IMG/VR virus record: IMGVR_UViG_3300023083_000001
Span: 194,358 to 258,357 of that record
Direction: 5' to 3' (one strand)
DNA length: 64,000 bases
Shown here piece by piece: positions 30,896 through 46,702 of the stretch. The notes under the pieces were generated by a model. The model was not told the DNA's origin. It saw only the letters and a program-made list of their open reading frames with translations, and searched no databases. Every line of letters starts with the position of its first letter. Positions within the stretch are counted from its first letter, which is position 1. The position numbers and the translations under genes were made by a program.

Positions 30896-30897
30896 TC

Positions 30898-31947
30898 ATG
30901 TTCGATAAGTATACGTCAGAAGTTCTCGCGCTGATTGAAAGGGCCATCAACGAAGTTACCGGTCAGGTGGTGACTGATGCTGAAGTCCTGGACATCCTTA
31001 AAGAGCTGGATAATCGCGGCCTTGAGGTTAAGGTCAAGCCGCGTGTACTGGATGAGCTGCAAGCCGAGTTTGCGAGAACAACTCACGACATGCCTTTCAT
31101 CATCCGTCCTCAAAGCTTGCCGTTAGTGGAGGATAGAGTGTCGGTTCGTCGTGAGGAAGTCCACGGTGGGGTGGATTACTTCGCTTACTACAGACAGCCC
31201 AATAAAGCCACAGCTGAAAGGGTGAAAGCTGAGTTCGATAAGGAACTGGGCTGTACCGACAAAACGAAGATCGTTACCGTACCATCAGAACAATCGGTCG
31301 TATCGGGTACGGCCGCAGCAGTTGTCTCGACACTGAGCCCACTAGGTGTATCACCAGCCTTTATGGTGGACGGTAAGTACAACGCCGAAATGCACCGTAT
31401 GATGATCGATGAGGAGATCAACAATCCGACTTACCCGCATGTGATGAAACTTCTGAAGCCTAACCTCGTAGTGGACTTGGAAGACCTCAAACGGAAAACC
31501 GAAGGACTCGATCCCAACGACGCGTTTCTGACGCAAGAGCAACAAGGGTGGATCGTGCAACGTTGTAATGTTGACAAAGAGTATTTCGAAGCAAAGGTGG
31601 CCATGATCGATCGCAAGCTTATCGCCGACATTGATATCTCTGATACCTATCCGAAAACAATGACGTTAGCGGTAGATCTCCCACCCTCCCCTTTCACGGT
31701 GGTTATTCATCATGACTGGGAGGTGGATTTGATTCGTTCCGACAGAACCTCGTTCTTCAAACGGGACGAGTATTCTGTTCTTCTTGCCGATTTAATGAAA
31801 GTCGTTACGGATGTCCGGGCCGCAATACAACGAACTGAACATTCCAGCAGAAACGATATTAATGTATCTATCACAATGAGCATTGCTGCAATGTTTGATA
31901 GTAACCCGAACTTCAAAGGTGTGACTTACCTCAGTCCCAAGACGTAG
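30898..31947 (+). CDS. Accessory hypothetical protein
   Basis: About 350 aa; AAGGAG SD. Confidence 0.8.
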   Translation: MFDKYTSEVLALIERAINEVTGQVVTDAEVLDILKELDNRGLEVKVKPRVLDELQAEFARTTHDMPFIIRPQSLPLVEDRVSVRREEVHGGVDYFAYYRQPNKATAERVKAEFDKELGCTDKTKIVTVPSEQSVVSGTAAAVVSTLSPLGVSPAFMVDGKYNAEMHRMMIDEEINNPTYPHVMKLLKPNLVVDLEDLKRKTEGLDPNDAFLTQEQQGWIVQRCNVDKEYFEAKVAMIDRKLIADIDISDTYPKTMTLAVDLPPSPFTVVIHHDWEVDLIRSDRTSFFKRDEYSVLLADLMKVVTDVRAAIQRTEHSSRNDINVSITMSIAAMFDSNPNFKGVTYLSPKT

Positions 31948-31951
31948 ACAG

Positions 31952-31996
31952 CATACAGCCCGGCTCACGCCGGGCTGTATGTCACTTCTTTTTTTT
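31952..31996. repeat. Palindromic CATA-stem-TATG element / bidirectional terminator
   Basis: catacagcccggc-TCAC-gccgggctgtatg (13-bp perfect stem) followed by cttc and a T8 run; convergent junction. Confidence 0.88.
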
Positions 31997-32007
31997 GTAT
32001 CAAACCA

Positions 32008-33630
32008 CTACTGAGCTGGAGAGTAGTAGATCACGACGTTATTGCGCTCTTCTTCTGAAGTCACGTAACGCAGGATGTGGTTCAGATCGTAGAGCTTGGC
32101 TTCCTGTACACGGCCCGCAGGACGGCGCGTGTGGATCAGCAGGGTCAGCAGATCTTCGAACGTCGAGGACGCCGACTTGCTCACTTTCATCTGAGCCCAA
32201 CCACGGCGAGCCTTATCGGAGATGAACAACGTGTTGTAGTTCTCGTTGATGAAGTCCAGCAGGATGTTCCAGCCTTCGTAGAAGGACTGGGTGTCGCGCT
32301 GCATGACCAGACGGATTGCCTTGTACAGAATGACCTGAGCAGTTGCTGCCGTGGCTTCGGTCAGGTTCGACCCATTCTTGGACATGATGTTCTTGTACTC
32401 TTCCAGCTTGGACTTCAGTAGCATGTTATCCACGTTTGCCTCCGACGGCATTTCAGGTAGTGAATCAAGCAGACGTGCGGCGCTGAAGGACTGAGTCAGC
32501 CCCAAACGTTGACGCAGTTGCTCCAGCAACTCTTCTTCAGTGAAATCAGTATCGATCTCCTTGAGCAGAGCGCTTCGTAGTTCTTTGTACTGCCAGTGGT
32601 GGATCGACTTCGCTTTACGAGTCGCATCGTCTTTCAGCACACCTTGAGAAGTGTACTCAGGACGTTCACCGGTGAGGGCGTAATGCTTGGCTGCTTCGAC
32701 AGTCCAGTTGCCTGGCATGCGGAAACGTTTGTACAGCTCTTCTTCCAGAGCCTGCTCATCGACACCCTTAGGTGTCTTGATGCTGCCGTCTACCCAATCG
32801 AGCAGTTCGTCAGACGACCAGTCGGTGAGCGTACGTTGACGGCGGATATCTACCGGCCAGTTACCGCGGCGGGTCTTGGCTGGTTGGACACGCGATTCGT
32901 GGTAAAGGAACAACGTTGCGAAGTCCCAACCTTTCAACGCATCTTCAGGAAGGATACGGCTGTACAACGCTCGCAGATCTTCCTCAGTGAGTTTCTTGGC
33001 TTCAGCTTCACCAACGGTTACCTTTTCCCCGCTTTCAGGCTCAGCAGCCTCAGGCGCTACGGCAGCCGGTTCAGCCTTATCTTCCGGCGCAGCGCCCTGC
33101 TCTCCGCTCGACTCTTGAGCTTGGGTGCCTTCGGATGACTGAAGTCCATCATCCTGGACAGCTCCAGCATCTCCAGTAAGACTGGCTTCGGGTAGCGGGG
33201 CATCCACAGCTTCACTCGGACCAGACGTTTCGAGAGTTTCGCTGCTGTCATCTTTCGACTCAGCAGGGGCTTCTGAGGCTTTGCCGCCATCCGATTCGTC
33301 TGCCGCGCTGTCATCCGAGGACTTGCCGCTTTCGCTACCTGAATCCTGATCAGACGCCTGGTTGGGTTCGCCGACAACGTCAGGGAATTCCTTCGGTTCA
33401 GCTGTAACAGTGCTACGCTGGTCTTTATTGACATTGGAGTTACCTTCCACCGGATCGCTGGCAGGTCCTGGTTCCAGGATGGTATCGGATCCTGGAATGT
33501 GTTCAACGTCGCCAGTTGCACCACCTTTGTTGTCGGTGTTATCCAACACTTGACCCGAAGTAGGATCTTGCATTGGGGCGTTGTTCTGATTACCCGCTAC
33601 AGGGTTCTTTCTGTTGTTCTTGGAAGACAT
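32008..33630 (-). CDS. Conserved core protein with long acidic disordered N-terminus (phiKZ gp81-like position)
   Basis: 540 aa adjacent to vRNAP beta'-M; about 200 aa of D/E/S/A-rich N-terminus. Confidence 0.75.
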   Translation of the reverse strand: MSSKNNRKNPVAGNQNNAPMQDPTSGQVLDNTDNKGGATGDVEHIPGSDTILEPGPASDPVEGNSNVNKDQRSTVTAEPKEFPDVVGEPNQASDQDSGSESGKSSDDSAADESDGGKASEAPAESKDDSSETLETSGPSEAVDAPLPEASLTGDAGAVQDDGLQSSEGTQAQESSGEQGAAPEDKAEPAAVAPEAAEPESGEKVTVGEAEAKKLTEEDLRALYSRILPEDALKGWDFATLFLYHESRVQPAKTRRGNWPVDIRRQRTLTDWSSDELLDWVDGSIKTPKGVDEQALEEELYKRFRMPGNWTVEAAKHYALTGERPEYTSQGVLKDDATRKAKSIHHWQYKELRSALLKEIDTDFTEEELLEQLRQRLGLTQSFSAARLLDSLPEMPSEANVDNMLLKSKLEEYKNIMSKNGSNLTEATAATAQVILYKAIRLVMQRDTQSFYEGWNILLDFINENYNTLFISDKARRGWAQMKVSKSASSTFEDLLTLLIHTRRPAGRVQEAKLYDLNHILRYVTSEEERNNVVIYYSPAQ

Positions 33631-33636
33631 GGACAG

Positions 33637-34929
33637 TTACCTCAAAAAGCCCTCTACATCCAGAGGGGTGGTTTTCAGTTCCTTAGCGTGGGCAGATCCC
33701 ATCATCACGGCCATCATGGTCGAGGGGATCTCGCTAATCATGGAACCGACAGAGTCGGGGTACTGGCTTACCTTGTCGCCCATGCACACGGTACAGACAT
33801 CGCCACGTGGGGTAATGCAGTAGGTGGGGGCAAAGATACCGTAGAGTTTGCCTTCGTATGTTCCCAGGTTCTCAGCGGTGATCTTGACGGGTTTACCATC
33901 GTCTAACAGCGTGCGGCCAATCCGACGTTTATCGATAATCACATCCAGTGTGTTCTTGGTACCACAGAACTCTTTGACGATCCGGGCGTTCTGGAAGATA
34001 CGTCCCATCAAGTCCACGTCTTCACCCGCCAGTGCAGTCAGAGCACCACGGTAGTAGGAACCTGCCCGCAGTGAGTTGACCATGTCTGGATACTTGGTGA
34101 CATCCAGACCTTCATCCAGAGAGTTCTTGATCAGTGTGGCGCGTCCGCCTTCAGAGAAGCCGGCCTCTGGGCCGTGAATCAGGAACATGCGTTTGAGCGC
34201 AGTGTTCAGAGACTTCTTCTTATAAAGGAATCCTTCAGCAGGATCCCCCTTTAAGTTGTTCTCTATGTAGTTTTTCACCAACGCGTCTTGAATCTTGGAC
34301 TGAGCCACTGGGTCGTCAATCTGATCCTTGTACTGCTCAAACAGTTCATCGCGCAGCTTGGTGTTGTTGGCAGGCGCTTGAAGCGACTTCTCCGTTACAG
34401 AAGGTACAAACAACTCATACCCCGCCAGGTCGCCAATAGCTTTGCCAAAGCGCAGCCAATGTTTGACGTACAACTGACCAGCGACATCCCTCCCCTCCGA
34501 AGGGTCATCCTGCATACGGTCAACGAAGATCTGTTCGATACTGCCCAAGTCAACAGGGCCGACTTGATATTCGATACGATCCTGCGCTGCGTAAACCAAC
34601 ACGCGGCTGTTGAAGATGAGATCGCCCCATGTACCATTCTCCAGATCGACCTTCAGGTTCTCAACATCACCTGCTTTGATCGGTCCGGTTTCTTCGTGGT
34701 AGATGAATGGAATCTCGTAAGGGTTAACGCCCTCAAGTGGTTGCCATTCAAAAGTCCCCGTTTCATTAGGGACATACACCTCAACGCCTTCGGGGTTGTG
34801 TTTCAACGCCCAAGGTTCTGGTTCACCACCGATGTCAATTACAACACTCATGGCACGCAACATCCATTTACGGTCGTAATGCGCTTTGGCCTTGAGAGAC
34901 CCGATAAAGTAATCGTACTTACGCATCAC
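33637..34929 (-). CDS. Virion RNAP beta' middle subunit (phiKZ gp80-like)
   Basis: NSLRAGSYYRGALTALAG (bridge-helix-like), FCGT, YCITP..DVCTVCMG, MGSAH. Confidence 0.85.
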   Translation of the reverse strand: MMRKYDYFIGSLKAKAHYDRKWMLRAMSVVIDIGGEPEPWALKHNPEGVEVYVPNETGTFEWQPLEGVNPYEIPFIYHEETGPIKAGDVENLKVDLENGTWGDLIFNSRVLVYAAQDRIEYQVGPVDLGSIEQIFVDRMQDDPSEGRDVAGQLYVKHWLRFGKAIGDLAGYELFVPSVTEKSLQAPANNTKLRDELFEQYKDQIDDPVAQSKIQDALVKNYIENNLKGDPAEGFLYKKKSLNTALKRMFLIHGPEAGFSEGGRATLIKNSLDEGLDVTKYPDMVNSLRAGSYYRGALTALAGEDVDLMGRIFQNARIVKEFCGTKNTLDVIIDKRRIGRTLLDDGKPVKITAENLGTYEGKLYGIFAPTYCITPRGDVCTVCMGDKVSQYPDSVGSMISEIPSTMMAVMMGSAHAKELKTTPLDVEGFLR

Positions 34930-35809
34930 CTTCTCCGAAAATGGATTTGTATTTCTCAGCGTAACGAGGACGTAGTTGTTCAGCCTGACGACGAACGTCT
35001 ATTTCGAAACACAAGTCGTCCAGACATTCGCCGATAGCTACTTGAGCTGATTCAAAGCTTTCGCTGGAAATAGCGGCCAGGGAGAACAGTTGATCCACTT
35101 GTGTCTCAACCGGCTTATCCAACAACCGACCCACATGAACGCCGTACAGACTTTCAAGCGACGAACCCAGTCCCAAGTTCTGAGAACCTAACGTAGCGCC
35201 GAGAGAATCACCGTTAGCTTTTACCAAACGTGATAATCTTTTGAGCAAATCAGGCGACCCATCTTCACTGGTAACATCGTCGGTAGTCACTGCGTCCGCG
35301 CAGACCTTCCGTACGGTCTTAGTGAAGCCGTCGCTGATCTGCACCAACTGTGGGATCCATTCTTCGTAATCGAACGTACCGAGTTGATCCACGATCTTGC
35401 AGAAAGCGTCATCAACGTCTTCTGCCGAATCCAGCAGATCAACCAACACACCTGGTGTATCGGTAGGATCGAAGTTCAGGATGATATCCGCCGCTTCGGC
35501 GAGCATTTCCAGTGGGATGTCGGGGTTGAGTTCTACGCCGCAATTGTTGAGCGCACGTTCGGTCGACAGGCGCAGGATCTCGTCAACACTGACGGTAACT
35601 TGCTCTGGTCCGATATTGTGCGAACCCAACTCTCCAAGCAGAGCATCCAGTTCATCCAAGTGAGCCTTCCAGTGGCAGGCGCTTAACGTTTGATTCAGTC
35701 GGACATAGAGTTCCTCCAACTCTGGAGAGCAACGGTCACGTACTAAGGTACGGATAGTCCACTGAATGATGTCGTCATCTTCAAAATCGGCATCGGGTAA
35801 AACGTTCAT
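34919..35809 (-). CDS. Acidic conserved protein, probably virion-associated (gp79-like position)
   Basis: 296 aa coupled to the vRNAP gene. Confidence 0.7.
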   Translation of the reverse strand: MNVLPDADFEDDDIIQWTIRTLVRDRCSPELEELYVRLNQTLSACHWKAHLDELDALLGELGSHNIGPEQVTVSVDEILRLSTERALNNCGVELNPDIPLEMLAEAADIILNFDPTDTPGVLVDLLDSAEDVDDAFCKIVDQLGTFDYEEWIPQLVQISDGFTKTVRKVCADAVTTDDVTSEDGSPDLLKRLSRLVKANGDSLGATLGSQNLGLGSSLESLYGVHVGRLLDKPVETQVDQLFSLAAISSESFESAQVAIGECLDDLCFEIDVRRQAEQLRPRYAEKYKSIFGEGDA

Positions 35810-35841
35810 CGGACAAGCTCCCCGTCAGAACTGTAATTAAA

Positions 35842-35863
35842 CATAAATACGACCTTATATATG
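35842..35863. promoter_or_regulatory. Possible divergent late promoters (TATG on both strands)
   Basis: CATA at 35842-35845 and TATG at 35860-35863 in the divergent gap; TATG is the known phiKZ nvRNAP late consensus. Confidence 0.35.
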
Positions 35864-35894
35864 GGTCATCTAAAGCTTCATACTAGAGGTTATC

Positions 35895-36359
35895 ATGTCA
35901 GCATCTCATCAAACTACGCGATTCGGTTCGCGAGACGTAGATCTCAGCGCTCAGTGCGATGAGATTGAAAAGGACACGGTCAAGCTTTGCCGCTCGGTCG
36001 GGCTCGCTATCCGCGCAGCTATCCAACCCATTGAAGAACTACCGCTGTCGTTGTCGCTTCTCGAACAGGCGGGTCGTAAGGCCGACATTCCTAAACTGGG
36101 TCAGCTGGTCCAGTCGATTGCTCGCGATCAAGACAAGTTCATCGCTGAGAAAACGGCCCTCGATGCAAAGTTCGAGTCGCTGAAGAACGACCGCCCTACC
36201 AAGAAAGGTAGTCTGTCTCGTTATTCCAACAGCGTATCCTTTCTGGGTCATGAATACATCGACCTGAACCAACGGATCGCTCAAACCATGGGGATGACGA
36301 TCGGCGATTACTTCGATCTCATCCAACCACTAACCGAACCCGCTGAGGCTGTATCGTGA
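35895..36359 (+). CDS. Conserved hypothetical protein (helical)
   Basis: 154 aa; GAGG SD; GTGA overlap with the next gene. Confidence 0.78.
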   Translation: MSASHQTTRFGSRDVDLSAQCDEIEKDTVKLCRSVGLAIRAAIQPIEELPLSLSLLEQAGRKADIPKLGQLVQSIARDQDKFIAEKTALDAKFESLKNDRPTKKGSLSRYSNSVSFLGHEYIDLNQRIAQTMGMTIGDYFDLIQPLTEPAEAVS

Positions 36360-38170
36360 CCGATAGCAAAACTCCTGACGACGAAGTATCGAAAGACGAA
36401 CCCGGTGTCCACACCGGTAGCCATCAAGACGATAGCTCTGCACCTGCCGAGACGGTTGTTGATTCGGCAAGCGGTGACGAACCTCTCCTGGCACCGCCGG
36501 TTGATGAGGATGAAGATACGGTCAGTCAGCATCTGGTTGACGATCCTATTCCAGCTCCTGAGCCACAAACAGAACCTGCCGGTCAAGCAGGTGCTGACGA
36601 AGAACCTGAAGCAGCGCCTGACGTTTACGCCGGTATCTACACACCGAACGAGAACGTCACTGAAACGCTGAAAGTGCTCGACGAACTCACCGACGATGAA
36701 CTGCGGGCTTTGGCCAAAAACGGTTCGGTACTTCTTTCCAACATGGAAGAAGAAGAGTTGATCAAGATCGATGCCATGGTCCGTCAGCAAATCGGACGTA
36801 ACCAGAAGCATCGTCGTAAGCTGGTTGACGATGGCGTTCCAGGTGATTGGCAAGCTGTTGAATTCATGCGGGGCGATAAGCCCATCATCGTCTTCATGAC
36901 AGAAGCTGAACGTGAAGCAATGCAGGTGCTCGAGTTTTACAGCCGCTCGATCCGTCACGGTACTGGTCAGGATGTTTTCACCGACGGTAACAAGTGGACC
37001 AACCTGCCGGCGATTGGTGATTCGAAGATTGCCATGGGTCTGGTTGACCACAGCAAGAACAAAGATCCGATCGTTGTGCTGCGTCATAAGCTGGGTCTGT
37101 CGAGTGAACACTCCGTCCCGATGTGGGGCACGGGTCTTCATTTGTCTCTTGAAGGACCAGGGGCTCTTGAGAACCTGATGCTTGACACCAAGCTGCTCCT
37201 CGAGAAGATCGATCAGGGCCGTGGCAGCAGCGGTTATGTCTACAGCGCCTCATCGGTTTACCTGAACCGTGAAGTGGCCTCGTTCGTGCTGAACAAGGTA
37301 CGTTACTCTACGGCTGGTACTGTGGACGTGGAAACGCTCAAGGACCTGTTGCTGCTGACTGACCTGGAACCACTGGCTCTGGGTGCTGCATCGACCATCT
37401 TCCCAGACGGTTACATGTTGCAACGTCCGTGTCTCACCTCCCAGGGTGGTTGTGGTCATGTGATTGAACGCCGTGTGAATCTACGTCGGATGCTCTTTGT
37501 CAGTGATTCCAAGCTGACCAAAGATCAGTTGCAGTTCATGTCCAAGCGTTCGGGTCGTGTTGACATCTCCACCATCAAGACTTATCAGGAGCAGATGCGT
37601 CCTCATATTTCCCGCCTGGTGGCGTTGAAGAACGGTCAAGCAATCCGTCTGCGCGTTCCGACCATTGCAGCCTACGAGCGTATCGCCGGCGCCTGGATGG
37701 ACAAGATGCAGAACAAGGCCAAGGAGCTGGTGCAGTCCAACGCCAATGAACAAGAACGTAACAACTACATGGCTCGGGCTACCAACGTTGCATTGTTGAT
37801 GGCGTACGGTCATTGGGTTGAAGCGTTTGTGGACTTGGGTAACGGTCTTGACGATGATGCAGTTGACATCGTTAGCCGTGCTGGTTCCAAAGATGCAGAA
37901 GTTCAGTACAAGGCGGACATGGCGATTGACAAGTTGCTGGAAGATCTTTCCGGCGACGTTGACTTGGCTACGAAAGTAGTCACTGCGATTGAGCAGTTCA
38001 TCGTCGACATGACCATCGCAACGGTAGCTGTACCTAAGGCAATCTGCCCTAAGTGCGGTAATCCGGTATCGGGTGACGAATCTTCCAAGCATCCACACTT
38101 GGTTAATATTAACCCGATCGAACTTTTTTTTACCCTACTCCGCCACAAAATAATGACTGCCGGCGGATAA
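36356..38170 (+). CDS. Putative tail/baseplate assembly chaperone (G- or T4 gp26-like) with Zn motifs
   Basis: 604 aa; acidic N-terminus; PCL...GCGH and ICPKCG; slippery site near the 3' end. Confidence 0.7.
   Translation: MTDSKTPDDEVSKDEPGVHTGSHQDDSSAPAETVVDSASGDEPLLAPPVDEDEDTVSQHLVDDPIPAPEPQTEPAGQAGADEEPEAAPDVYAGIYTPNENVTETLKVLDELTDDELRALAKNGSVLLSNMEEEELIKIDAMVRQQIGRNQKHRRKLVDDGVPGDWQAVEFMRGDKPIIVFMTEAEREAMQVLEFYSRSIRHGTGQDVFTDGNKWTNLPAIGDSKIAMGLVDHSKNKDPIVVLRHKLGLSSEHSVPMWGTGLHLSLEGPGALENLMLDTKLLLEKIDQGRGSSGYVYSASSVYLNREVASFVLNKVRYSTAGTVDVETLKDLLLLTDLEPLALGAASTIFPDGYMLQRPCLTSQGGCGHVIERRVNLRRMLFVSDSKLTKDQLQFMSKRSGRVDISTIKTYQEQMRPHISRLVALKNGQAIRLRVPTIAAYERIAGAWMDKMQNKAKELVQSNANEQERNNYMARATNVALLMAYGHWVEAFVDLGNGLDDDAVDIVSRAGSKDAEVQYKADMAIDKLLEDLSGDVDLATKVVTAIEQFIVDMTIATVAVPKAICPKCGNPVSGDESSKHPHLVNINPIELFFTLLRHKIMTAGG
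38125..38167 (+). other. Putative -1 programmed frameshift signal (slippery heptamer plus hairpin)
   Basis: CTT TTT TTT ACC in frame; 7-nt spacer; tccgcc (38139-38144) / ggcgga (38162-38167) stem. Confidence 0.65.
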
Positions 38171-38619
38171 GGACCAACGCCAAAGGGGTATTCGAAGATT
38201 TCATTCACCACGTCGGTAACCTGAACTTTGGGGAGGGTAAATCGCCCTTCACAACAGGGACTGAGTTAAACGACTTGGTGATGAATGAAACGATTCCCGA
38301 TGACTGGACCCGTCAACTGGCAATGATGGAAACGTACGATCAGTCCATGGGGATCTTTGACCATGACTCAGCTGAAATGACTGATCCACTTTCTGTCATT
38401 GGGTTCCACCCCGCCGAGGATCCTGTAACAGGAAACAGACTGGAGATCTTGATGCGTGAGTTGATCGCGTGTCGAATTCCAGAGCTGACCAACACGCCTC
38501 TTGCTGAACTCCTCAACTATCCACGTCACTTACTGGATATGTTGCTCAAGGACGGACGTAAGGCGCGTAAGAAGGAAGAGGCGGATATAACCCAGTTGAA
38601 CCTGGACTTGTCCGGGTAG
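38131..38619 (+). CDS. Tail-assembly-chaperone T-like ORF, probably expressed as a -1 frameshift extension (track ORF 38275-38619)
   Basis: Frame open from 38113 to 38619; no well-spaced SD before TTG 38275 or ATG 38281; TPLAELLNYP...LL resembles GT/gpE'-type tails. Confidence 0.65.
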   Translation, partial: YPTPPQNNDCRRIRTNAKGVFEDFIHHVGNLNFGEGKSPFTTGTELNDLVMNETIPDDWTRQLAMMETYDQSMGIFDHDSAEMTDPLSVIGFHPAEDPVTGNRLEILMRELIACRIPELTNTPLAELLNYPRHLLDMLLKDGRKARKKEEADITQLNLDLSG

Positions 38620-38641
38620 CAGTGCGTGACGGAGCGAACAG

Positions 38642-38673
38642 CATACAGCCCCGGCTCAGGCCGGGGCTGTATG
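38642..38673. repeat. Palindromic CATA-stem-TATG element at a convergent junction
   Basis: catacagccccggc-TCAG-gccggggctgtatg (14-bp stem); near copy of the 31952 element; no U-tract. Confidence 0.88.
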
Positions 38674-38677
38674 TCGC

Positions 38678-40009
38678 TTACTGAAATTTACCGTTCAAAG
38701 CCTTACGGTACTTCCAGAGTACTGCCTGTTCCGACAAGGTGAAGTCTTCTTTCTTATCAGTCACGTAACGGTCCATCGTCTTCGCTACGTTGAGCGCAGC
38801 TTTGGATACAGCGATCGTTACGTTGTTACGGTTGGCTACCAACATCCCGAGAGAATTCTCAAGCGCTGTGAAGCCTTGCAGGATCGAAGTCAACGACATG
38901 AAGAATGGAGCCAGCTTGTTGACGTAAACATCTTGCAGCGAGGCAGGAAGCTTCGTCTCGTCGAAGGACTTGATACGATCCAACGTCGGAGTGATGCGCG
39001 CAGTACTGCTGTTGATCAGACCGTTCAGATCCGAAGACCAGTCATCCACACGCCCTGTCACGATCGTCTTGGTGAAAGCAGCTTCATCAATAGGAGGACG
39101 GGAGTTCTCAGCACTGCGATAGCTGTTGAGCAGGAAACCCGACATGCTTTGGAAGTTGGTCATCTTACTGTTGACCTGAACACTCTTGGTGGAGTATCCA
39201 GCTTCAGTCACCAGGCGCGTCAACGCCCCGCTGGTCATGTCTACCAACTCGATCTTGGCAATCGCCAGGTCGATGTCGGCAGCCGTCTGCGCAACGATCA
39301 ACTCTTTCAGGAACGCATCCACACCTTCAACGAATGGCGAGACTTTGAGAGTCAACACACCGATGATGGTTTTGAACGCTTCATGATGTTGTTCCGGCGC
39401 TTGTAGAAAACTCTGCTTCAGGCCGTTCCATTTGTAGGCGTTGTGGGCTTCGCTCTTGAAAGCACCATCTTTGACTTTCTTGAAGTCACCAGCCATGCGA
39501 GTGCCGGAGACGACTTTGTCGGTTTCGATGATGTAGTTCTGAATTGCAATGAGTTTCCCGCCCACGTCGTCCACCGCTTGTGTACGCTGAGTATCGCTTT
39601 GAATGAATTGCCACAGACGTTTGAACGACTTGACAACGAAATCCAGGATCTGACGAAGTGCCTTGACTACAGCTTCAAACGCTGTACGTGTAAAGCCTTC
39701 CATCGACACGTCGTAGTTCACCCTGGAAGGTTCCAAGGTAAAGCTGTTGATCGGGTATTGATCGACCAGATCGTTGAGTGCTGGGTACAGAGGTGTTAAA
39801 GCCTTGACGCGTTCCATGTCACCACGGCAGATGTACTTACGGTCTACGATGGTGCTGTAGGCGTCGAACACCGTTACCATGTTACCGTACTCTTGATCAT
39901 GCACTGGGTTCAGCAGGTCTGTATCTACAGCACTTTTAGCTCCGATCTCATCGGAGAAAGCTTCACCGGATTCGAATGACAGATTGTCCAAAGCGATACT
40001 TACGTTCAT
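38678..40009 (-). CDS. Internal head protein (phiKZ gp86-like)
   Basis: 443 aa; S-x-E protease-type sites (SFE, SME) followed by an amphipathic helix. Confidence 0.72.
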   Translation of the reverse strand: MNVSIALDNLSFESGEAFSDEIGAKSAVDTDLLNPVHDQEYGNMVTVFDAYSTIVDRKYICRGDMERVKALTPLYPALNDLVDQYPINSFTLEPSRVNYDVSMEGFTRTAFEAVVKALRQILDFVVKSFKRLWQFIQSDTQRTQAVDDVGGKLIAIQNYIIETDKVVSGTRMAGDFKKVKDGAFKSEAHNAYKWNGLKQSFLQAPEQHHEAFKTIIGVLTLKVSPFVEGVDAFLKELIVAQTAADIDLAIAKIELVDMTSGALTRLVTEAGYSTKSVQVNSKMTNFQSMSGFLLNSYRSAENSRPPIDEAAFTKTIVTGRVDDWSSDLNGLINSSTARITPTLDRIKSFDETKLPASLQDVYVNKLAPFFMSLTSILQGFTALENSLGMLVANRNNVTIAVSKAALNVAKTMDRYVTDKKEDFTLSEQAVLWKYRKALNGKFQ

Positions 40010-40061
40010 TTCACGTCCTTCAGTTTTGATTCGATACTACAGGCTGCTTAAGCAACCCGTC

Positions 40062-40484
40062 CTACACGCGCAGCAGGTTTACAGCTTCAAACACTTCAGC
40101 GTTCTGGATCTTCAGTGTTTCGATCTCAGGCATCAGTTCCAGCAGCGTCTGCGAGAACGGTGCGATTTGCAGCAGGTCTGAAGCCTTGGTGTTGAACGCG
40201 ATGTTGTAACGACGCTCGTACAGACGGAAAGCGTATTCACAAGCCCGGTCCACATCGAATGGCAGCGCTTCGTTGATTTCAAACAACGCCGCACGGCAGC
40301 TGTCAGCGTTCTCTTTGAAGTAGCCACGCAGATCGCCTTGGGAGATTGGCGACGACGGCATCGGGACAACCAGCGCGCAAGCCAGTGCGAGTACCACGGT
40401 GACACGTTGACGACGGTTCTCGACCGTAATACCTTCCGGCATAGCGGAGAGGGTCGACACGATATTGATAGCGTTCATTGCCAT
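40062..40484 (-). CDS. Small head-associated protein (gp85-like position)
   Basis: 140 aa; AAGGA SD; TAATG overlap. Confidence 0.7.
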   Translation of the reverse strand: MAMNAINIVSTLSAMPEGITVENRRQRVTVVLALACALVVPMPSSPISQGDLRGYFKENADSCRAALFEINEALPFDVDRACEYAFRLYERRYNIAFNTKASDLLQIAPFSQTLLELMPEIETLKIQNAEVFEAVNLLRV

Positions 40485-41785
40485 TATCCTTTCAGAGCAG
40501 CGGAGAGTTGATACAAACGATTGTTAGCAAGTTCTTCAGTCAACTCTTGCTGACCGATTTCTTTACCACGTCCAATGACAGCGTCCAGTGAATAACGAGT
40601 GATCTTACCAAACACATCAGACCATTCGTGCTTCTCTTCCAGTAGCTTATCCAGCTCATCGATCTCGGCCAGGATCTGTTTGCGAAACGCATCGTCGAGT
40701 GAGCGATCTTTTAGAACAGTCACCAACTCACGACGTAACGCTGCAATACGCTGAGGAAGTGTGGTGTATCCACTAGACAGTGCAAAGAACGTAAACGAGT
40801 TGGTTGCCATGCCGATAGCGAAGGTAGTAGCGATCCGTTTGATCGTGGCAAGAAGGACTTTAGCTGCACCTTCGGCCACAGTAGCGAATGGCAAGGCGAC
40901 GATGTTGGAAAAGTTCATCATCAGACCAAACCACTTAGGCTCATACCCGGCTTCAGCAAAGATCCCAGCACTGCGTTCTAATTTAGTCAGACCACGTGCT
41001 AAGTCCACACCCATACCCCATCGAGCCGCGAACTGATCAGCTACAGCTTCAGCCATGCGTTGATCGTACCACCGGGTATTGAGAGCACGCTGCATCCGAG
41101 TAACTTGACCTTCAAGCACCATCGCCACTACTTCAGCGCTGGTTACATCCTCACGCAGTGACTTGTCAACTTCAGCCAAACGCAGAGCAGCCTTACCGAC
41201 CCACATGCGTTTCTCAAGGGTTTCCTGATTGTCCATCCGACCCACTACTTCAGCCAGGATGTAGTTGGTGATCAACGTTTGCCCGAGGTATTCGTAGTAG
41301 GTGTAACAGTGACCCAACTCGTGGAAGTAAAAACCTGCCACTTCACCCGCTGTGAAATACCCGTCAAAGAATGACGGCGTGATCAAGAACTCGTTGGTCA
41401 ACTTGCTGAAGAACCCACCCACTTTAGCCATCTTCAAATCAACGTAACCGTCGATGATCTGATTGCCATTCATGTTATCCAAATCAAACTTGGCTAACAG
41501 CTTCTCTGCACGTGGGTTCAGTGGGGACAGTGCATTGAGATTAGGAACCATCGCCGCAACGTGATAAGGGCCACGCAGGAATGCCTTCTTAGTGAAGTAA
41601 GGCTTAAAACGAATACCTGTGGCGTCTAACGTCAGCTGGGCGATCTCGTTCAGATACCTCTCAATGAGGTGCAGTTCACCGTTAGCCGTCATTGCCTGTT
41701 GAAACAGTTTGGTCACGCGTTTCGGGTACTCGGCGTTCGTCTGAAAGGCAATCGCTTCCATCGACTCCTGTAGCGTAAGTGTCAT
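40484..41785 (-). CDS. Virion protein with M48-like zinc metalloprotease motif (gp84-like position)
   Basis: FHELGH, downstream EAVADQFAARWG, hydrophobic stretch; N-terminal SME site; ATG 41785 after GGAG. Confidence 0.7.
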   Translation of the reverse strand: MTLTLQESMEAIAFQTNAEYPKRVTKLFQQAMTANGELHLIERYLNEIAQLTLDATGIRFKPYFTKKAFLRGPYHVAAMVPNLNALSPLNPRAEKLLAKFDLDNMNGNQIIDGYVDLKMAKVGGFFSKLTNEFLITPSFFDGYFTAGEVAGFYFHELGHCYTYYEYLGQTLITNYILAEVVGRMDNQETLEKRMWVGKAALRLAEVDKSLREDVTSAEVVAMVLEGQVTRMQRALNTRWYDQRMAEAVADQFAARWGMGVDLARGLTKLERSAGIFAEAGYEPKWFGLMMNFSNIVALPFATVAEGAAKVLLATIKRIATTFAIGMATNSFTFFALSSGYTTLPQRIAALRRELVTVLKDRSLDDAFRKQILAEIDELDKLLEEKHEWSDVFGKITRYSLDAVIGRGKEIGQQELTEELANNRLYQLSAALKG

Positions 41786-41848
41786 GATAGTAGCTCCATA
41801 AGCCACGGTGGGAATCATCCCATTTGCAGTACAAATCTAATTGGTAGA

Positions 41849-41854
41849 CATATG
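41849..41854. promoter_or_regulatory. Possible bidirectional TATG late-type element
   Basis: CATATG in the divergent gap between the 444-aa gene and the exonuclease gene. Confidence 0.3.
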
Positions 41855-41887
41855 CTTTACGGGGAACTCAAATGAAAGAGGCAACTG

Positions 41888-43699
41888 ATGTCCATTCCTA
41901 CTACTGCGGCTGAGATTGACAAGTATATTTTGTCACTCCCCAAAGAAAGAATTGTTGCACGTGAATGTAAGCATGCCACGTATACCACTCACCGTAATGG
42001 TGAACGGGCAGACATGCTGGTTATCAAGGAATATCTGATCCTGGATGACGGTACGCGTATTCCACGCATCCGTAATGTCGAGAATTACCAACGACCTTAT
42101 TGGGTCACCAAGCCACACTTTCGTACCCACCCAGACAAGATCCAGTTTGAAGATCTGTCACGTCTTGACATGTTCAAGTCACCGCAATGTAAGTTGCGTC
42201 AAGACATCTGCATGCGCTTAGGTCACGGTAACCCGTCGAACCCGATCAAGATGCTGGCACGTTCACCATTCTTGTACGGGCTGGATCCAGGTCCTGAAGT
42301 CTTCCTGAAACAAAGTTACATGACCAAGTGGCCTGATTCGTTTGCACCTAACCGTGTCACCGTGATCGATGCCGAGACCGATGTGAACGGCGCACTGCAC
42401 AAGAAGTTACAATTGCCGATCTGCTGGTCACTCGTCAGCGATGATGAGATTGTTCTGTATGGTAATCAGGAATGGACGTACGACATTCCCAACTACGCCG
42501 AGCAGGTGTTGGCTGAGTACAAAGAAGTCATCGGTCAATGGGTCGAGATGATCCGTGAAACGTTGAAAGAAAAGAAAGGCGAGAACAAAGGTAAGTATCC
42601 AGAGTGGGTAGACCTGATCGAGAAGATTCCGGTGCGTGTTGAAATGTTGAAGAACGACTTCGCCATTACTAAAGGCATGGTCGATCGGCTACATGAAACC
42701 CAACCCGACATCGTCACAGGCTGGAACGTATTCTTTGATGCGAAAGTCATCGAGACGTCCATCGTCAATGCCGGACAAGATCCAGCTGACGTGTTGAGTG
42801 ATCCTCGTGTTCCGTTTGAGTACCGTGGCGCATTGTTGCGAGAAGGTCAGCGTGACAAACTGACGGCGTCTGGTCGTAAGATGCAGCTCGATCCACAGGA
42901 ACGTTGGAACGTTGTGCTCAACACAGCCTCCTGGCGTATGCTCGACGCGATGCAGGTGTATTGGCAGTTGCGTAAGGCAAAGGGTAAGGAATCTGGCGGT
43001 TACGGCTTAGACGCGATTCTAGGACGTCAACTCAAAACCGGTAAGTTGAAGTACGCTACAGAAGACACCATGGTTCCACCGGGTACGCTTCACTGGCACA
43101 TGGACATGCAGAAGAACTACAAGGTCCGATACGGTGTGTACAACATCATCGACTCCTTGGGTGTATGGGTGTTGGATAAGAAGAACAACGACTTGTCTTC
43201 ACAAGTCAGTTCGTTGGCAGGCCCTGCCGACTACTCTAACTTCAACTCACAACCGCGTGTCAACGCCACCGACATGCTCTTCAGCGTCTTGAAGATGCGT
43301 AAGAAAGTGATCTGTTCGACGTCCGACCAGATGGCTGATGAGAACGACAAGCTGGTAACCGGTAAGGACGGGTGGATTATCACCTTCCCCTCACACAACG
43401 TCGTGGACTCAGGTCTGTTCTTGTTTGAGGACATGCCGAACGTTCAATCAATGATCCACATGTTCAACGCGGATGCTGACGTTGAAACGACATACCCCAC
43501 TGCTGAGATCATTCAGAACCTTTCCAAGGAGACGACAATCGCAGAACCATGCAGGGTGATGGGAGTGGGTCGAGAAGCATTGCGTCTCGCCAGTGTCAAC
43601 ATGACAGGTGGTCGAGGCAATGCCGTTGAGATCATCGAAACCATTTGCAAGATGCCCACGTTTGATCAGTGGGTAGAGTTAGCCAAAGAAAAGATGTGA
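41888..43699 (+). CDS. Family B DNA polymerase, N-terminal half: 3'-5' exonuclease plus motif A (phiKZ gp82-like)
   Basis: ExoI DAETD, ExoII GWNVFFD, ExoIII YNIID; motif A-like DADVETTYP. Confidence 0.88.
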   Translation: MSIPTTAAEIDKYILSLPKERIVARECKHATYTTHRNGERADMLVIKEYLILDDGTRIPRIRNVENYQRPYWVTKPHFRTHPDKIQFEDLSRLDMFKSPQCKLRQDICMRLGHGNPSNPIKMLARSPFLYGLDPGPEVFLKQSYMTKWPDSFAPNRVTVIDAETDVNGALHKKLQLPICWSLVSDDEIVLYGNQEWTYDIPNYAEQVLAEYKEVIGQWVEMIRETLKEKKGENKGKYPEWVDLIEKIPVRVEMLKNDFAITKGMVDRLHETQPDIVTGWNVFFDAKVIETSIVNAGQDPADVLSDPRVPFEYRGALLREGQRDKLTASGRKMQLDPQERWNVVLNTASWRMLDAMQVYWQLRKAKGKESGGYGLDAILGRQLKTGKLKYATEDTMVPPGTLHWHMDMQKNYKVRYGVYNIIDSLGVWVLDKKNNDLSSQVSSLAGPADYSNFNSQPRVNATDMLFSVLKMRKKVICSTSDQMADENDKLVTGKDGWIITFPSHNVVDSGLFLFEDMPNVQSMIHMFNADADVETTYPTAEIIQNLSKETTIAEPCRVMGVGREALRLASVNMTGGRGNAVEIIETICKMPTFDQWVELAKEKM

Positions 43700-43746
43700 C
43701 ATAAAGCCCCTACCCATGACCGGCACTCGCTAGTCATGGGTAGGGG
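43700..43746. terminator. Hairpin at a convergent junction
   Basis: CATA, then cccctacccatgac / gtcatgggtagggg (14-bp stem). Confidence 0.78.
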
Positions 43747-43756
43747 TCTATTACGT

Positions 43757-46690
43757 TTACGTACTGGCGTGACGCTTGAAGTTCACTTCGATCGAGTCGA
43801 TCACCGCGAAGGTTCCGTCTGGTTGATTCAACAACGATTTTGCAATGCAGAACCGTGAGGATTCATCCAGGATGGTAACCACGTTGTAATCGTTCTCAGG
43901 ACCACCCAGGCCGGACAGATGGATGCTGACGATGTCAGTACCCGCCTTGGCACGGATAGCGCTCTCGAGCGTGTTACGGGAGATCACGGTAGCATCCAGA
44001 CCAGCCACTGCTTCTGCAATAGCCGTAGCCTCGAGAGACTTACGGATGTCGTTATCACCGTACACTTCTTTGCTGACGTAGAAATCAATCGTCAACGATT
44101 GCGCCGTATGCAGCGTCTTCAGTTCGCTGTCCTCAACCAGACAGTCAACAAACTTCAACGTGTTACGCGGTTGGAAGTACAGATCGGTACGTTCGATGAG
44201 ATTCTCACGCACAGCGCCTAAGGTCTCGTTGATCCAGGTCACCAGGATCTTCGGTGCTTCAGCAGTGTAGGTCGAATCATTGATGTCCGTCGCGTAACGA
44301 TAGACCGCATCGAAGAGCACCACGTCCCACCAACGAATGATGTTACGCTCTGATTCCATGATCGGATTGCCGTTCTCATCGAGGACAGCTTCACCGGCCC
44401 TATGCCGCATTTCCTGCACACCGTCCGCATTGAGGACAGGATCGCCCTTAGCGAATTTGACCTTGAGGTGTTTGTCGGCACCCGTACCTTCGATGATCAC
44501 CTGGTTGTTAGCGTCAGTGGCGTAAACGTTCTGCAAGTAGAACTTGGGAACATCCACTTGATAGGTCAGATACTTTCTCAGACCGATCATGCTGCGAGCA
44601 CGAGCCCACAGACCTGACATCTCATCACCCAGCACCACCGAGATGGTTTCGTGGTACACGCCAATCGATCCATCAGGCAACAGGAACTTACCCACTGCAT
44701 CATCCACCGGCATTTTAGTAGCACCGACGACAGTGTAGTCACTCACCGACCAGATCAAATGGAAATCTTGATGCAGGACGGTAGGGTAAGCTCGTTCGAT
44801 AGGTTCGTACATGCTGAAGTTGGTCAGGGTCAACAAGTGATCCTTGGTGATGTCCCATCTCGTGCTCAGCTTGAACTCAAACCAACGTTCGCCATCGGAG
44901 CCTTTGGTGATCTGCACACCGTTGATGTACGCAAGGTCGCTTTCGCCATCGGGGTAGTACGCCAACTGCACATGCACCTGATCGTCACGCAGCGCTTGCC
45001 AAGCGGCATTGGAGCTACTCTTGATCTGGATCACGTAACCATCTTCATTACGAGTAATTGTTTCACTCGTACTGGAACTGATGGTCAGCCCCAAGGTGTC
45101 GTTACTGGCCATGTAGGACGTAACGTCTAACGTTGGTGCGTTGAGGAAGTAAGGACGTGCATGGAACTCGTTCTCACCAATGTCCAACACGTAATGCAGC
45201 GGCGTGTACAGGTAAGTGCCATCGCTGATGGTGTTCACCTTGGCATCACCTGTCAACAACTCGAGCGCACGACGATCAGCGTCTGAAACAATCTTCAAGA
45301 CCCCGTCAGTGTTGCGATACAAAGTCTGAGGTGTCACGGTAAACCGTGTGCCGTTGTCAATGACCGTGTCCATGTTCACGATGTCACTGATTGCAGTCTT
45401 CATCGTGATAACAGCCGAGTCGATCCCGGTGCTAGCCTGACCCGCTGGGTTGGACGGCATTGCACGTGTCGCCAGGTACGTACGGTTGGTCACGTCATCG
45501 ATGTTCATGATCACATCGAAACCCAGTTCGGCTAACTGAGTCCCCATCTGAGCATCACTGATCGGCAAGACCGAATCGCCAACCGAGTTGGTGAGTACAC
45601 GTTGACGACGTTCTTCAAACGACGGCGCAGCTGCACCACCTGTCACGATATCCGTGGAGAAGATGCTAACAGTAGCCATCACGGTCAGAGGTGCGTAGTA
45701 GATCGCGTTGTCGTCTTCATCCAGGTCGCGCCATGTGGCGACGTAGTTGGTCGGCTCCAGACCCGAGAGCGACAGGTTCATCGGTCCCTTGGTAGTGTAG
45801 ACATCCACCCGGATATCACGCGTAGTCAGATCGGTTGCGTAATACACATAGGGCAGTTCAATCGTTAACTCACCATCTATGACCTTATACAGCAAGGTTG
45901 GATCGGTAGGGTCGAATACTTGTTGGCTGCGAGTGGTCTTGATCTCAGACCACAGCCCTGACGACAAACGGCTGAACGCACGAACGTAATAGAAGTCATC
46001 GGTCAACGTCAACACTTTCTTCAGCGACTTCGAGGCGCTCAAGCTGTACTGGTAAGACGTCAGGAGCATCTGTTTAAGGAACACCCTCAAACGCACCATA
46101 ACGACGTGTCCGCCGTTATTATCGGTGATGCCAGTCGTTACCAGACTCCAATCGACTTTGTTCCCACGCAGCGTTTGCAGAGGCGACAACTGACTGCCGT
46201 CATACACGACATCAATAGCACCGTGCGTCTTGACCAGGAAGTTAATCGGATACTGAAAGGTAAAGGCTGCATTGTTGACCACGATCTGCGTGTGTTTAGG
46301 GATGGTCAGTTTCTTGGTCCCAGTCGTCCCCACACGCACAGCGTTCTGCAAGATCTCGTCACGAGAGATGTAGATGTCAAACCACGTCCCGGCAGGCGTT
46401 GCAAACATCCCCTCGTAATCTTTGTCGGACAAGTGATAGTAAAGATCATCATCTTCCACCGCCATGACTGAATACTGACGGGTGTTCAGAATCTCATCGC
46501 GCTGTACAGCGCCTGCGGTCATCAACACAGAGGCTTCGATCAAGTGAGGGAAAGGCATCGATGGATCGACCATCAACACTTCACCATCAAACGCAGCTTC
46601 CAGGTTTTCCATCATCAAGCTGTTGAGCCGAGTAGGCTCGTAACGGATCTCAGCCATGGCAGCCAAAAGCTGAGTAGAAGTAATTGTCAT
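43757..46690 (-). CDS. Baseplate wedge protein, T4 gp6/baseplate-J-like (phiKZ gp87-like)
   Basis: 977 aa; TGGAAAPSFEERRQRVL matches the baseplate-J GG.D.E..E..R.R pattern. Confidence 0.72.
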   Translation of the reverse strand: MTITSTQLLAAMAEIRYEPTRLNSLMMENLEAAFDGEVLMVDPSMPFPHLIEASVLMTAGAVQRDEILNTRQYSVMAVEDDDLYYHLSDKDYEGMFATPAGTWFDIYISRDEILQNAVRVGTTGTKKLTIPKHTQIVVNNAAFTFQYPINFLVKTHGAIDVVYDGSQLSPLQTLRGNKVDWSLVTTGITDNNGGHVVMVRLRVFLKQMLLTSYQYSLSASKSLKKVLTLTDDFYYVRAFSRLSSGLWSEIKTTRSQQVFDPTDPTLLYKVIDGELTIELPYVYYATDLTTRDIRVDVYTTKGPMNLSLSGLEPTNYVATWRDLDEDDNAIYYAPLTVMATVSIFSTDIVTGGAAAPSFEERRQRVLTNSVGDSVLPISDAQMGTQLAELGFDVIMNIDDVTNRTYLATRAMPSNPAGQASTGIDSAVITMKTAISDIVNMDTVIDNGTRFTVTPQTLYRNTDGVLKIVSDADRRALELLTGDAKVNTISDGTYLYTPLHYVLDIGENEFHARPYFLNAPTLDVTSYMASNDTLGLTISSSTSETITRNEDGYVIQIKSSSNAAWQALRDDQVHVQLAYYPDGESDLAYINGVQITKGSDGERWFEFKLSTRWDITKDHLLTLTNFSMYEPIERAYPTVLHQDFHLIWSVSDYTVVGATKMPVDDAVGKFLLPDGSIGVYHETISVVLGDEMSGLWARARSMIGLRKYLTYQVDVPKFYLQNVYATDANNQVIIEGTGADKHLKVKFAKGDPVLNADGVQEMRHRAGEAVLDENGNPIMESERNIIRWWDVVLFDAVYRYATDINDSTYTAEAPKILVTWINETLGAVRENLIERTDLYFQPRNTLKFVDCLVEDSELKTLHTAQSLTIDFYVSKEVYGDNDIRKSLEATAIAEAVAGLDATVISRNTLESAIRAKAGTDIVSIHLSGLGGPENDYNVVTILDESSRFCIAKSLLNQPDGTFAVIDSIEVNFKRHAST

Positions 46691-46702
46691 TTCAAATCCC
46701 CA

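What the first reader, a model, noticed from the sequence alone, without database searches (positions are those of the whole stretch)
31952..43746. Two gene blocks appear inverted exactly at convergent palindromic terminators
Seen: block A (31952-38673: 540aa, vRNAP, 296aa on minus; 154, 604, T-like on plus) and block B (38642-43746: 443, 140, 444aa on minus; exonuclease on plus) are each divergent units bounded by hairpins. Two of these hairpins are near-identical (acagcatacagcccggctcacgccgggctgtatgtc and acagcatacagccccggctcaggccggggctgtatgtc). Recalled order in phiKZ gp79-87 and SPN3US gp41-48: virion protein, vRNAP, gp81, exonuclease, gp84-85-86, baseplate. That order implies both blocks are flipped here. 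Inference: recombination between self-complementary terminators inverts whole units while keeping every junction convergent, which would be a transcription-neutral way to shuffle the genome.
Basis: partly seen in the sequence, partly recalled or inferred. Interest (0 to 1): 0.72.

Follow-up and report, generated by a model that had tools for sequence, protein, structure and literature searches.

The report
Ancient gene-module flips at phage terminators
In this phiKZ-like jumbo phage, two self-contained gene modules sit back-to-front compared with most relatives, and each flip ends exactly at a two-way transcription terminator; the flips are real but old and fixed, and the terminators have not been shown to cause them.

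Summary
Blocks A (virion protein, vRNAP subunit and 296 aa on minus; 154, 604 and 114 aa on plus) and B (443, 140 and 444 aa on minus; a 603-aa DNA-polymerase homologue on plus) are divergent units. Strong hairpins separate them in 57-60 nt convergent spacers at 31948-31984, 38638-38675 and 43701-43752.

Orthology and synteny were checked in 29 relatives. Most Chimalliviridae carry both modules in the opposite orientation (L A' B' R; the window is L A B R). Genome-wide against the nearest isolate (DT01), the only multi-gene inversion is block B, bounded by hairpins 2 and 3.

Four points limit the interpretation:
- The arrangement is identical in six independent metagenomic relatives down to 51% polymerase identity, so the flips are ancient and fixed.
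- The two "near-identical" hairpins belong to a genome-wide family of about 16 copies. Its outer box is conserved across the whole phage family, so their likeness is not specific to block A.
- Hairpin 3 is unlike hairpin 2.
- Other inversions in this region (phiKZ, SPN3US-like phages) have breakpoints that are not at terminators.

Some evidence favours a recombination role. Module A flipped at least 5 independent times. In phage OBP a 41-nt inverted repeat made of the two terminators flanks the polymerase module, and terminator types have moved between junctions. The mechanism is plausible but unproven.

The parts
24454..30226 (+). Left flank L: two RNA polymerase beta/beta' subunit genes (718 and 657 aa) and a helicase (525 aa). 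Its orientation relative to the right flank is constant in every relative examined.
   Evidence: PHROG 3295, 3015 and 16; synteny table
30274..31947 (+). Three accessory genes (112, 102, 351 aa) between the helicase and hairpin 1. No homologue was found in the relatives' loci.
31948..31984 (.). Hairpin 1: bidirectional terminator at the L|A convergent junction. It has a 14-bp stem and loop TCAC, and a T-run follows on the plus strand.
32008..33630 (-). Module A: 540-aa virion structural protein (phiKZ gp81-like)
   Evidence: PHROG 18270; tblastn to phiKZ
33637..34929 (-). Module A: virion RNA polymerase beta-type subunit, 430 aa (phiKZ gp80 homologue)
   Evidence: PHROG 2962, E = 5e-102; 305 phage records hit
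34919..35809 (-). Module A: 296-aa protein (phiKZ gp79-like)
   Evidence: PHROG 5038
35810..35894 (.). Divergent intergenic region of module A. It is presumed to hold the module's own promoters; this is inferred and no motif was established.
   Evidence: sequence only
35895..38619 (+). Module A, plus arm: 154-aa (gp78-like), 604-aa (gp77-like, PHROG 4585) and 114-aa genes. The 114-aa gene travels with the 604-aa gene in relatives.
38638..38675 (.). Hairpin 2: bidirectional terminator at the A|B convergent junction. It has perfect 14-nt arms and loop TCAG.
   Evidence: (I10)
38678..41818 (-). Module B, minus arm: 443 aa (gp86-like, weak Pfam PF25617), 140 aa (gp85-like) and 444 aa (gp84-like, PHROG 2767)
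41819..41887 (.). Divergent intergenic region of module B (presumed promoters, inferred)
41888..43699 (+). Module B: 603-aa family-B DNA polymerase homologue (phiKZ gp82)
   Evidence: PHROG 3011, E = 1e-165
43701..43752 (.). Hairpin 3: bidirectional terminator at the B|R junction, with CCCCTACCCATGAC arms. It is unrelated to hairpins 1 and 2. It is conserved next to the 977-aa gene in the 84% relative, and its CCCTACCC stem recurs in OBP, EL-like and Erwinia phages.
   Evidence: (I18)
43757..47785 (-). Right flank R: 977-aa gp87-like baseplate/virion protein and 360-aa gp88-like protein (Pfam Phage_TTP_15 in relatives)
   Evidence: PHROG 3248 and 3196

Best explanation
The region is a row of self-contained divergent transcription modules. 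Each carries its promoters in a central divergent spacer. The modules are separated by phiKZ-type bidirectional intrinsic terminators that fill the short convergent spacers.

In the lineage of this phage, the vRNAP module (A) and the DNA-polymerase/gp84-86 module (B) were each inverted in place relative to the arrangement most Chimalliviridae keep. The events are ancient and are now fixed throughout a deep clade.

Shown: the anatomy, the orthology, the flipped state, its fixation, and breakpoints confined to spacers of 60 nt or less that are mostly hairpin.

Inferred, at roughly even odds: the inversions arose by recombination or template switching between the palindromic terminators. These terminators are members of a dispersed repeat family and therefore act as inverted repeats of one another. 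Selection then kept the products because no operon, promoter or terminator is disturbed.

The likeness of hairpins 1 and 2 is best explained by the shared terminator motif, not by a recent exchange.
For: - Anatomy and folds.
- Orthology.
- The window clade (six independent assemblies) is colinear with the window.
- Most other lineages are L A' B' R.
- The tree places the window clade as derived. A-state lineages are sister to A' lineages with 98-100% support, which gives at least 5 independent flips of A.
- Genome-wide against DT01, block B (38678-43699) is the only multi-gene inversion.
- Terminator family and motif. The published phiKZ and 201phi2-1 terminator motifs and bidirectional terminators at convergent genes.
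- Terminators do recombine or copy. OBP has a 41-nt, 95% inverted repeat (32 nt exact) flanking its pol module. pEt-SU has a 39-nt exact repeat at two junctions. Hairpin types differ at orthologous junctions in the two phages.
Against: - There is no recent or polymorphic flip. Relatives down to 51% pol identity share the order. OBP and pEt-SU (55% mean identity, 176 orthologues) show no inverted block despite many similar terminators.
- Hairpins 2 and 3 are dissimilar.
- Hairpins 1 and 2 have the same flank polarity.
- Two other inversions in the same region use tandem or divergent junctions, so terminators are not required.
- The source metagenome shows one colinear 13.5-kb contig. The loose ends at hairpin 2 are other family copies.
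- Selection alone would also place surviving breakpoints in convergent spacers.
Confidence: 0.6

Rival explanations
1. The hairpins are bystanders. Inversions arise at random microhomologies anywhere, and purifying selection removes all except those whose ends fall in convergent spacers. There they break no operon, so terminators merely mark the only permissible breakpoints.
For: - Inversions with non-terminator breakpoints exist in the same region: the phiKZ pol-gp83 pair, and the g604 arm in SPN3US-like and Phobos phages.
- Hairpins 2 and 3 are unrelated.
- Genomes are otherwise very stable. OBP versus pEt-SU has no inverted block, and G000 versus DT01 has only block B and one single gene inverted.
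- The similarity of hairpins 1 and 2 is explained by a family-wide functional motif.
Against: - Module A flipped at least five independent times with the same ends.
- A 41-nt inverted repeat of terminators flanks the OBP pol module, and terminator types have been copied between junctions.
- The spacers are 57-60 nt, of which about 38 nt is hairpin, so any breakpoint there is in or beside the palindrome.
Confidence: 0.32
2. The blocks are a programmed or currently active invertible switch. Both orientations coexist in the population and are interconverted by a recombinase acting on the hairpins.
For: Palindromic repeats flank block A. An SbcD-like palindrome nuclease is encoded at 16433-17632.
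Against: - No serine or tyrosine recombinase is found in the complete 258-kb genome.
- The orientation is identical in six independent assemblies.
- A single colinear contig at depth 44.7 is seen in the source sample, with no strand-changing joints.
Confidence: 0.03
3. The orientation is an assembly artefact caused by the palindromic repeats.
For: Palindromes of 34-38 nt can tangle de Bruijn graphs.
Against: The same order is found in six assemblies from different samples and pipelines. A Logan contig from the source run spans 38150-44100 with 0 differences. The arms are only 14 nt.
Confidence: 0.02

Closest known systems
phiKZ / 201phi2-1 conserved intrinsic terminator motif and bidirectional terminators (Putzeys et al., bioRxiv 10.1101/2023.10.13.562163; PMC11512511)
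   Same: A GC-rich stem-loop with a conserved tail. Here the tails are GTATGTCGT on one strand and GTATGCTGT on the other, against the published TTATKYYGT. There are dozens of copies per genome, and overlapping two-way terminators lie between convergent genes.
   Different: The outer box here is extended into the stem (CATACAG...CTGTATG), and one subfamily shares the whole 14-nt arm. In one-way terminators of this genome the box lies 5' of the hairpin on the sense strand, so its role is unsettled. No transcript ends have been mapped for this phage.
PeSL promoter-terminator cassettes that mediate modular shuffling in T4-type phages (PMC2839356, PMC4122927)
   Same: Dispersed, conserved regulatory stem-loop repeats lie at gene-module boundaries and are proposed as recombination substrates. 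Accessory genes are gained and moved at these junctions: extra genes sit between pol and the 977-aa gene in two relatives, and one gene lies at different terminator junctions in OBP and pEt-SU.
   Different: PeSLs act mainly as direct repeats, giving insertion, deletion and replacement between close relatives. Here the proposed outcome is in-place inversion of essential core modules. It is seen only at deep divergence, and recombination intermediates have not been shown.
Inversions between inverted repeats, and hairpin loop flip-flops in plastid non-coding DNA (own knowledge: Kelchner and Wendel 1996; general inverted-repeat-mediated inversion, e.g. PMC5372343)
   Same: Short palindromic stem-loops at gene 3' ends act as inverted repeats. 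The hairpin at the pol junction is in reverse-complement orientation in OBP compared with pEt-SU.
   Different: The scale here is 5-7 kb modules in a virus, and the arms are only 14 nt in this window.
Chimalliviridae core-genome blocks (Prichard et al., 10.1101/2023.02.24.529968)
   Same: The genes belong to the conserved core blocks. Flanks L and R keep a constant relative orientation in every genome examined.
   Different: That paper reports block and gene order as generally conserved. Here, among 27 genomes of known arrangement, the vRNAP module changes orientation at least 5 times and the pol module also rearranges.

Membership tests
phiKZ-like nucleus-forming jumbo phage (Chimalliviridae) | Split multisubunit virion and non-virion RNA polymerase genes | tested here: met
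   PHROG 3295, 3015 and 2962
phiKZ-like nucleus-forming jumbo phage (Chimalliviridae) | Core gene blocks syntenic with phiKZ gp71-90 | tested here: met
phiKZ-like nucleus-forming jumbo phage (Chimalliviridae) | Chimallin (ChmA) gene | not tested
   It would lie outside the region studied and was not searched for.
phiKZ-type conserved intrinsic terminator | GC-rich stem-loop with a conserved TTATKYYGT-like tail, in many copies per genome | tested here: met
   Tails GTATGTCGT and GTATGCTGT. There are 52 strong hairpins, 43 of them intergenic.
phiKZ-type conserved intrinsic terminator | Transcript 3' ends map at the hairpin | not testable with these tools
   No RNA run holds this phage.
Bidirectional terminator | Lies between convergent genes and folds stably on both strands | tested here: met
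Programmed invertible DNA segment (Gin/Hin/Cin type, shufflon) | Site-specific recombinase encoded by the element or genome | tested here: not met
   No match to PF00239 or PF00589 in the complete genome.
Programmed invertible DNA segment (Gin/Hin/Cin type, shufflon) | Both orientations present in one population | tested here: inconclusive
   Only the colinear form is seen, but only contigs could be laid, not reads.
Inversion by recombination between inverted repeats | Matching inverted repeats at both breakpoints | tested here: inconclusive
   Block A: 14-nt palindromic arms are shared. Block B: hairpins 2 and 3 are unrelated. OBP pol module: 41-nt inverted repeat.
Inversion by recombination between inverted repeats | Both orientations among relatives, with breakpoints at the repeats | tested here: met
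   Met only at deep divergence. No case was found among close relatives.
PeSL-like mobile regulatory cassette | Repeat carries both a promoter and a stem-loop, and flanks variable ORFs that differ between close relatives | tested here: inconclusive
   The stem-loop family and the gain of accessory genes at junctions are seen. No promoter was shown.

The most novel reading that the evidence does not exclude
The bidirectional terminators of Chimalliviridae are a concertedly evolving dispersed palindrome family. Because each copy is an inverted repeat of every other, the family serves as the recombination substrate that repeatedly flips whole divergent core modules, and moves accessory genes between junctions, without touching any transcription unit. 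This would be an inversion counterpart of T4 PeSL shuffling. Breaks made at extruded hairpins by the phage SbcCD-like nuclease may help it along.
Probability: 0.3. Interest if true: 0.65.

Novelty: new variant of a known kind. Interest (0 to 1): 0.45.

Why it matters
If terminator palindromes drive module flips, they would explain how jumbo-phage core genomes rearrange while staying viable. They would also predict where rearrangements can occur, which is useful for synteny-based classification, for assembling metagenomic jumbo phages and for engineering phiKZ-like phages. That would link regulatory-motif conservation to genome architecture. As it stands, the window shows a lineage-specific, ancient arrangement built from known kinds of parts. 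The more general result is that the vRNAP module is a recurrent inversion hotspot across the family.

Tried and rejected
- Nucleotide search against isolate phages: no match. The nearest isolate is only about 37% identical in protein.
- The search for related loci in viral contigs with the 604-aa protein: nothing.
- Read-level test for minority flipped junctions: only Logan contigs from 2018 runs exist. They show the colinear form, and the loose ends at hairpin 2 map to other family copies at genome positions 30035, 107892 and 148591. This cannot exclude rare variants.
- Homology of the small genes between DT01 and its sisters, tried in order to place the module A breakpoint: no homology, so uninformative.
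- Loop reverse-complement pairs among family copies (CGTGAA and TTCACG) were considered as a recombination signature. Rejected as weak, because GTGA-type loops are common in these terminators.
- Rfam: only a sub-threshold hit of hairpin 2 to a terminator part of sRNA sX6, E = 0.067.
- Pfam gave almost nothing for these proteins, so PHROGs were used instead.
- Whole-genome comparison of OBP with pEt-SU, looking for a recent inversion with informative breakpoints: no inverted block was found.
Full report
WHAT THE WINDOW IS. The window is the last 64 kb of a complete 258,357-bp viral record with direct terminal repeats. The source run, which holds every sampled word of the stretch, is labelled leaf-litter metagenome. 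PHROG matches identify a phiKZ-like jumbo phage. These include split RNA polymerase subunits, a helicase, a virion RNAP subunit, a family-B DNA polymerase homologue, gp87-like and gp88-like virion proteins, and an SbcD-like nuclease. No isolate phage matches at nucleotide level. The best protein match is about 37% identical, in Pseudomonas phage pPa_SNUABM_DT01.

CHECKING THE OBSERVATION. The two quoted hairpins are present exactly at 31948-31984 and 38638-38675, and a third, unrelated hairpin is at 43701-43752. The shared 14-mer occurs twice against 0.03 expected. Each hairpin sits in a 57-60 nt spacer between convergent genes. Each folds on both strands at -28 to -38 kcal/mol, with z from -6.3 to -8.4. 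So the region has this layout:
- L: RNAP subunits and helicase, on plus.
- Hairpin 1.
- Module A: 540 aa, vRNAP and 296 aa on minus; 154, 604 and 114 aa on plus.
- Hairpin 2.
- Module B: 443, 140 and 444 aa on minus; pol on plus.
- Hairpin 3.
- R: 977 and 360 aa on minus, then a long plus run.
The "exonuclease" is the phiKZ gp82 DNA-polymerase homologue.

THE HAIRPINS ARE A FAMILY, NOT A PAIR. In the whole genome, 8 hairpins have perfect ACAGCCC(C)GGC arms and about 8 more are variants. Of 52 strong perfect hairpins, 16 lie at convergent junctions and 27 at tandem junctions, by crude gene calls. Hairpin 2 matches copies at genome positions 107893, 148592 and 183721 better than it matches hairpin 1.

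The outer box (CGGCATA...stem...TATGCCGT and variants) recurs at convergent junctions in DT01, phiKZ, RTH11, Eowyn, FLC4-3B, D6, AH06, OBP and the metagenomic relatives. It matches the tail of the published phiKZ terminator motif. Published work on phiKZ and 201phi2-1 reports such motifs in about 60 terminators per genome, and overlapping two-way terminators between convergent genes. The likeness of hairpins 1 and 2 therefore needs no recombination between them. With roughly 8 of 19 convergent-junction hairpins belonging to the subfamily, two neighbours both being members is unremarkable.

ARE THE BLOCKS FLIPPED? I fetched the region from 29 relatives: 10 metagenomic contigs found through the polymerase and 19 isolates. 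All genes were mapped by tblastn and blastp. One locus (Xoo-sp14) ends before the polymerase, and another (mg84) lacks module A. Normalised to R, the arrangements are:
- Window and six metagenomic relatives (pol identity 84-51%): L A B R, gene for gene. The closest relative, mg84, covers only B and R.
- pVa-21, FLC9, Eowyn, D6, AH06, FBKp24 and four metagenomic contigs: (L) A' B' R.
- SPN3US-like SEGD1, and Phobos: as above, but the 604-aa arm is also on plus.
- phiKZ: L A', then pol on plus, gp83 on minus, gp84-86 on plus, then R.
- DT01, FLC4-3B, OBP, the EL-like GXNNA8, pEt-SU and PS2: L A B' R.
- RTH11 and LucasX: L B' A R.
L and R never change relative orientation.

Relative to phiKZ itself, only A and gp84-86 are flipped. 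This is because phiKZ has its own inversion of the pol-gp83 pair.

A whole-genome reciprocal-best-hit comparison with DT01 gave 51 orthologues at a mean 35% identity. It shows one multi-gene inversion, running from 38678 to 43699, that is from hairpin 2 to hairpin 3. It also shows one inverted single gene, which sits beside a convergent-junction hairpin in this genome.

POLARITY AND AGE. A concatenated tree of vRNAP, pol, gp87-like and gp88-like proteins was built (LG+G4+F, 1000 ultrafast bootstraps, midpoint root).
- The window clade is monophyletic (100%).
- It lies next to DT01 plus two A'B' contigs (100%).
- Each other A-state lineage is sister to A' lineages: FLC4-3B versus FLC9 and mg34 (100%), and OBP/EL-like versus AH06 (100%).
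- Fitch parsimony by hand gives at least 5 changes of module A orientation. There is one in-place flip of B (the window clade), and at least two events for the RTH11/LucasX order.
The window state is thus derived but old. It is fixed across a clade whose polymerases have diverged to 51% identity.

DOES THE EVIDENCE IMPLICATE THE HAIRPINS? For:
- The same module flipped repeatedly with the same ends.
- The spacers are almost entirely hairpin.
- In OBP the two terminators flanking the pol module form a 41-nt, 95% inverted repeat, 32 nt of it exact, including the asymmetric loop and bulge. Two of only three exact copies in that genome are this pair.
- In pEt-SU a 39-nt exact repeat sits at the gp87-like and vRNAP junctions. 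The two hairpin types occupy different orthologous junctions in OBP and pEt-SU, and the hairpin at the pol junction is reverse-complemented between them. Terminators are therefore copied or flipped between junctions.
- In the four window-clade genomes where both junctions are in hand, the hairpins flanking A resemble each other more than they resemble their orthologues.

Against:
- No flip is seen among close relatives.
- OBP and pEt-SU, with 176 orthologues at 55% identity, show no inverted block.
- Hairpins 2 and 3 are unrelated.
- Hairpins 1 and 2 share flank polarity, whereas a recent stem crossover would make the flanks symmetric.
- Two inversions in this region use a tandem or divergent junction.
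- The source sample yields one colinear 13.5-kb contig at depth 44.7. The loose ends at hairpin 2 are other family copies.
- No recombinase gene is present.
Selection alone would also confine surviving breakpoints to convergent spacers.

VERDICT. The "transcription-neutral" property is true by construction. The causal claim, recombination between self-complementary terminators, is plausible at roughly even odds but is not demonstrated for this locus.

COMPARISON WITH KNOWN SYSTEMS.
- The terminators are of the known phiKZ kind.
- Inversion between inverted repeats is a known mechanism.
- The idea resembles PeSL-mediated shuffling in T4-type phages.
- The core-genome paper describes block order as generally conserved, so the recurrent flipping of the vRNAP module adds to that picture.
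- I found no paper linking jumbo-phage terminators to module inversion.

Noticed in passing
L031 (Pseudomonas phage OBP) 8413-8453 and 14323-14363: The two bidirectional terminators flanking the OBP DNA-polymerase module form a 41-nt, 95% inverted repeat (32 nt exact), including the asymmetric loop. Only three exact copies of the arm exist in the OBP genome.
   Followed up: yes
L035 (Edwardsiella phage pEt-SU) near 6859-6907 and 21308-21367, compared with L031: A 39-nt exact direct repeat of a terminator lies at the gp87-like and vRNAP junctions. Terminator types occupy different orthologous junctions in OBP and pEt-SU, and one is reverse-complemented in place. This suggests copying or conversion among terminators.
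   Followed up: partly
whole genome G000; e.g. window 23986-24042, 6285-6319, 14264: A box (A)CGGCATA lies just 5' of terminator hairpins on the sense strand, even at one-way terminators that end in a T-run. It often follows the stop codon directly. It is the reverse complement of the TTATGCCGT-like tail of the published phiKZ terminator motif and is conserved across the phage family. Its function (terminator part, antisense promoter or other) is unresolved.
   Followed up: partly
L020 (phiKZ) 15961-19862 versus L030 (phage D6) 23929-28209: phiKZ carries its own inversion of the convergent pair pol plus gp83. The breakpoints are at a tandem junction and a divergent junction, not at convergent terminators. 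The gp83 homology is weak (E = 3e-10 over 83 aa).
   Followed up: partly
L029 (SEGD1, SPN3US-like) and L025 (Phobos) versus L022 (pVa-21): In these phages the gp77-like (604-aa homologue) arm of the vRNAP module is on the same strand as the vRNAP gene. This is an arm-only inversion between a convergent and a divergent junction.
   Followed up: partly
window 16433-17632 (+): An SbcD-like subunit of a palindrome-specific nuclease (PHROG 100, E = 2.5e-38). It is a conceivable source of breaks at extruded terminator palindromes. This is speculation only.
   Followed up: no
L013 11841-12428 and L014 11833-12060; window 30274-31947: Module junctions are also places where accessory genes appear. Extra 195-aa and 75-aa genes lie between pol and the 977-aa gene in two relatives. 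Three genes without homologues lie before hairpin 1 in the window.
   Followed up: no
genome G000 135835-136479 (outside the window) versus DT01 17840-18466: A single gene lies at different genomic positions and on opposite strands in G000 and DT01. In G000 it sits on the minus side of a convergent-junction hairpin (135779-135835). The G000 hairpins at 97431 and 135786 share the flanks GCGGCATA and ACACTTCTTTTTTT.
   Followed up: partly
OBP 71089-71838 versus pEt-SU 35219-36265: One virion-protein gene sits beside the vRNAP terminator in OBP but beside the pol terminator in pEt-SU. In the rest of the genome the two phages show no inverted block.
   Followed up: no
window 38150-44100 in run X2: A second leaf-litter metagenome holds a closely related strain, with most pieces 95-99% identical or better and at low depth. 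This indicates the phage recurs in this habitat.
   Followed up: no
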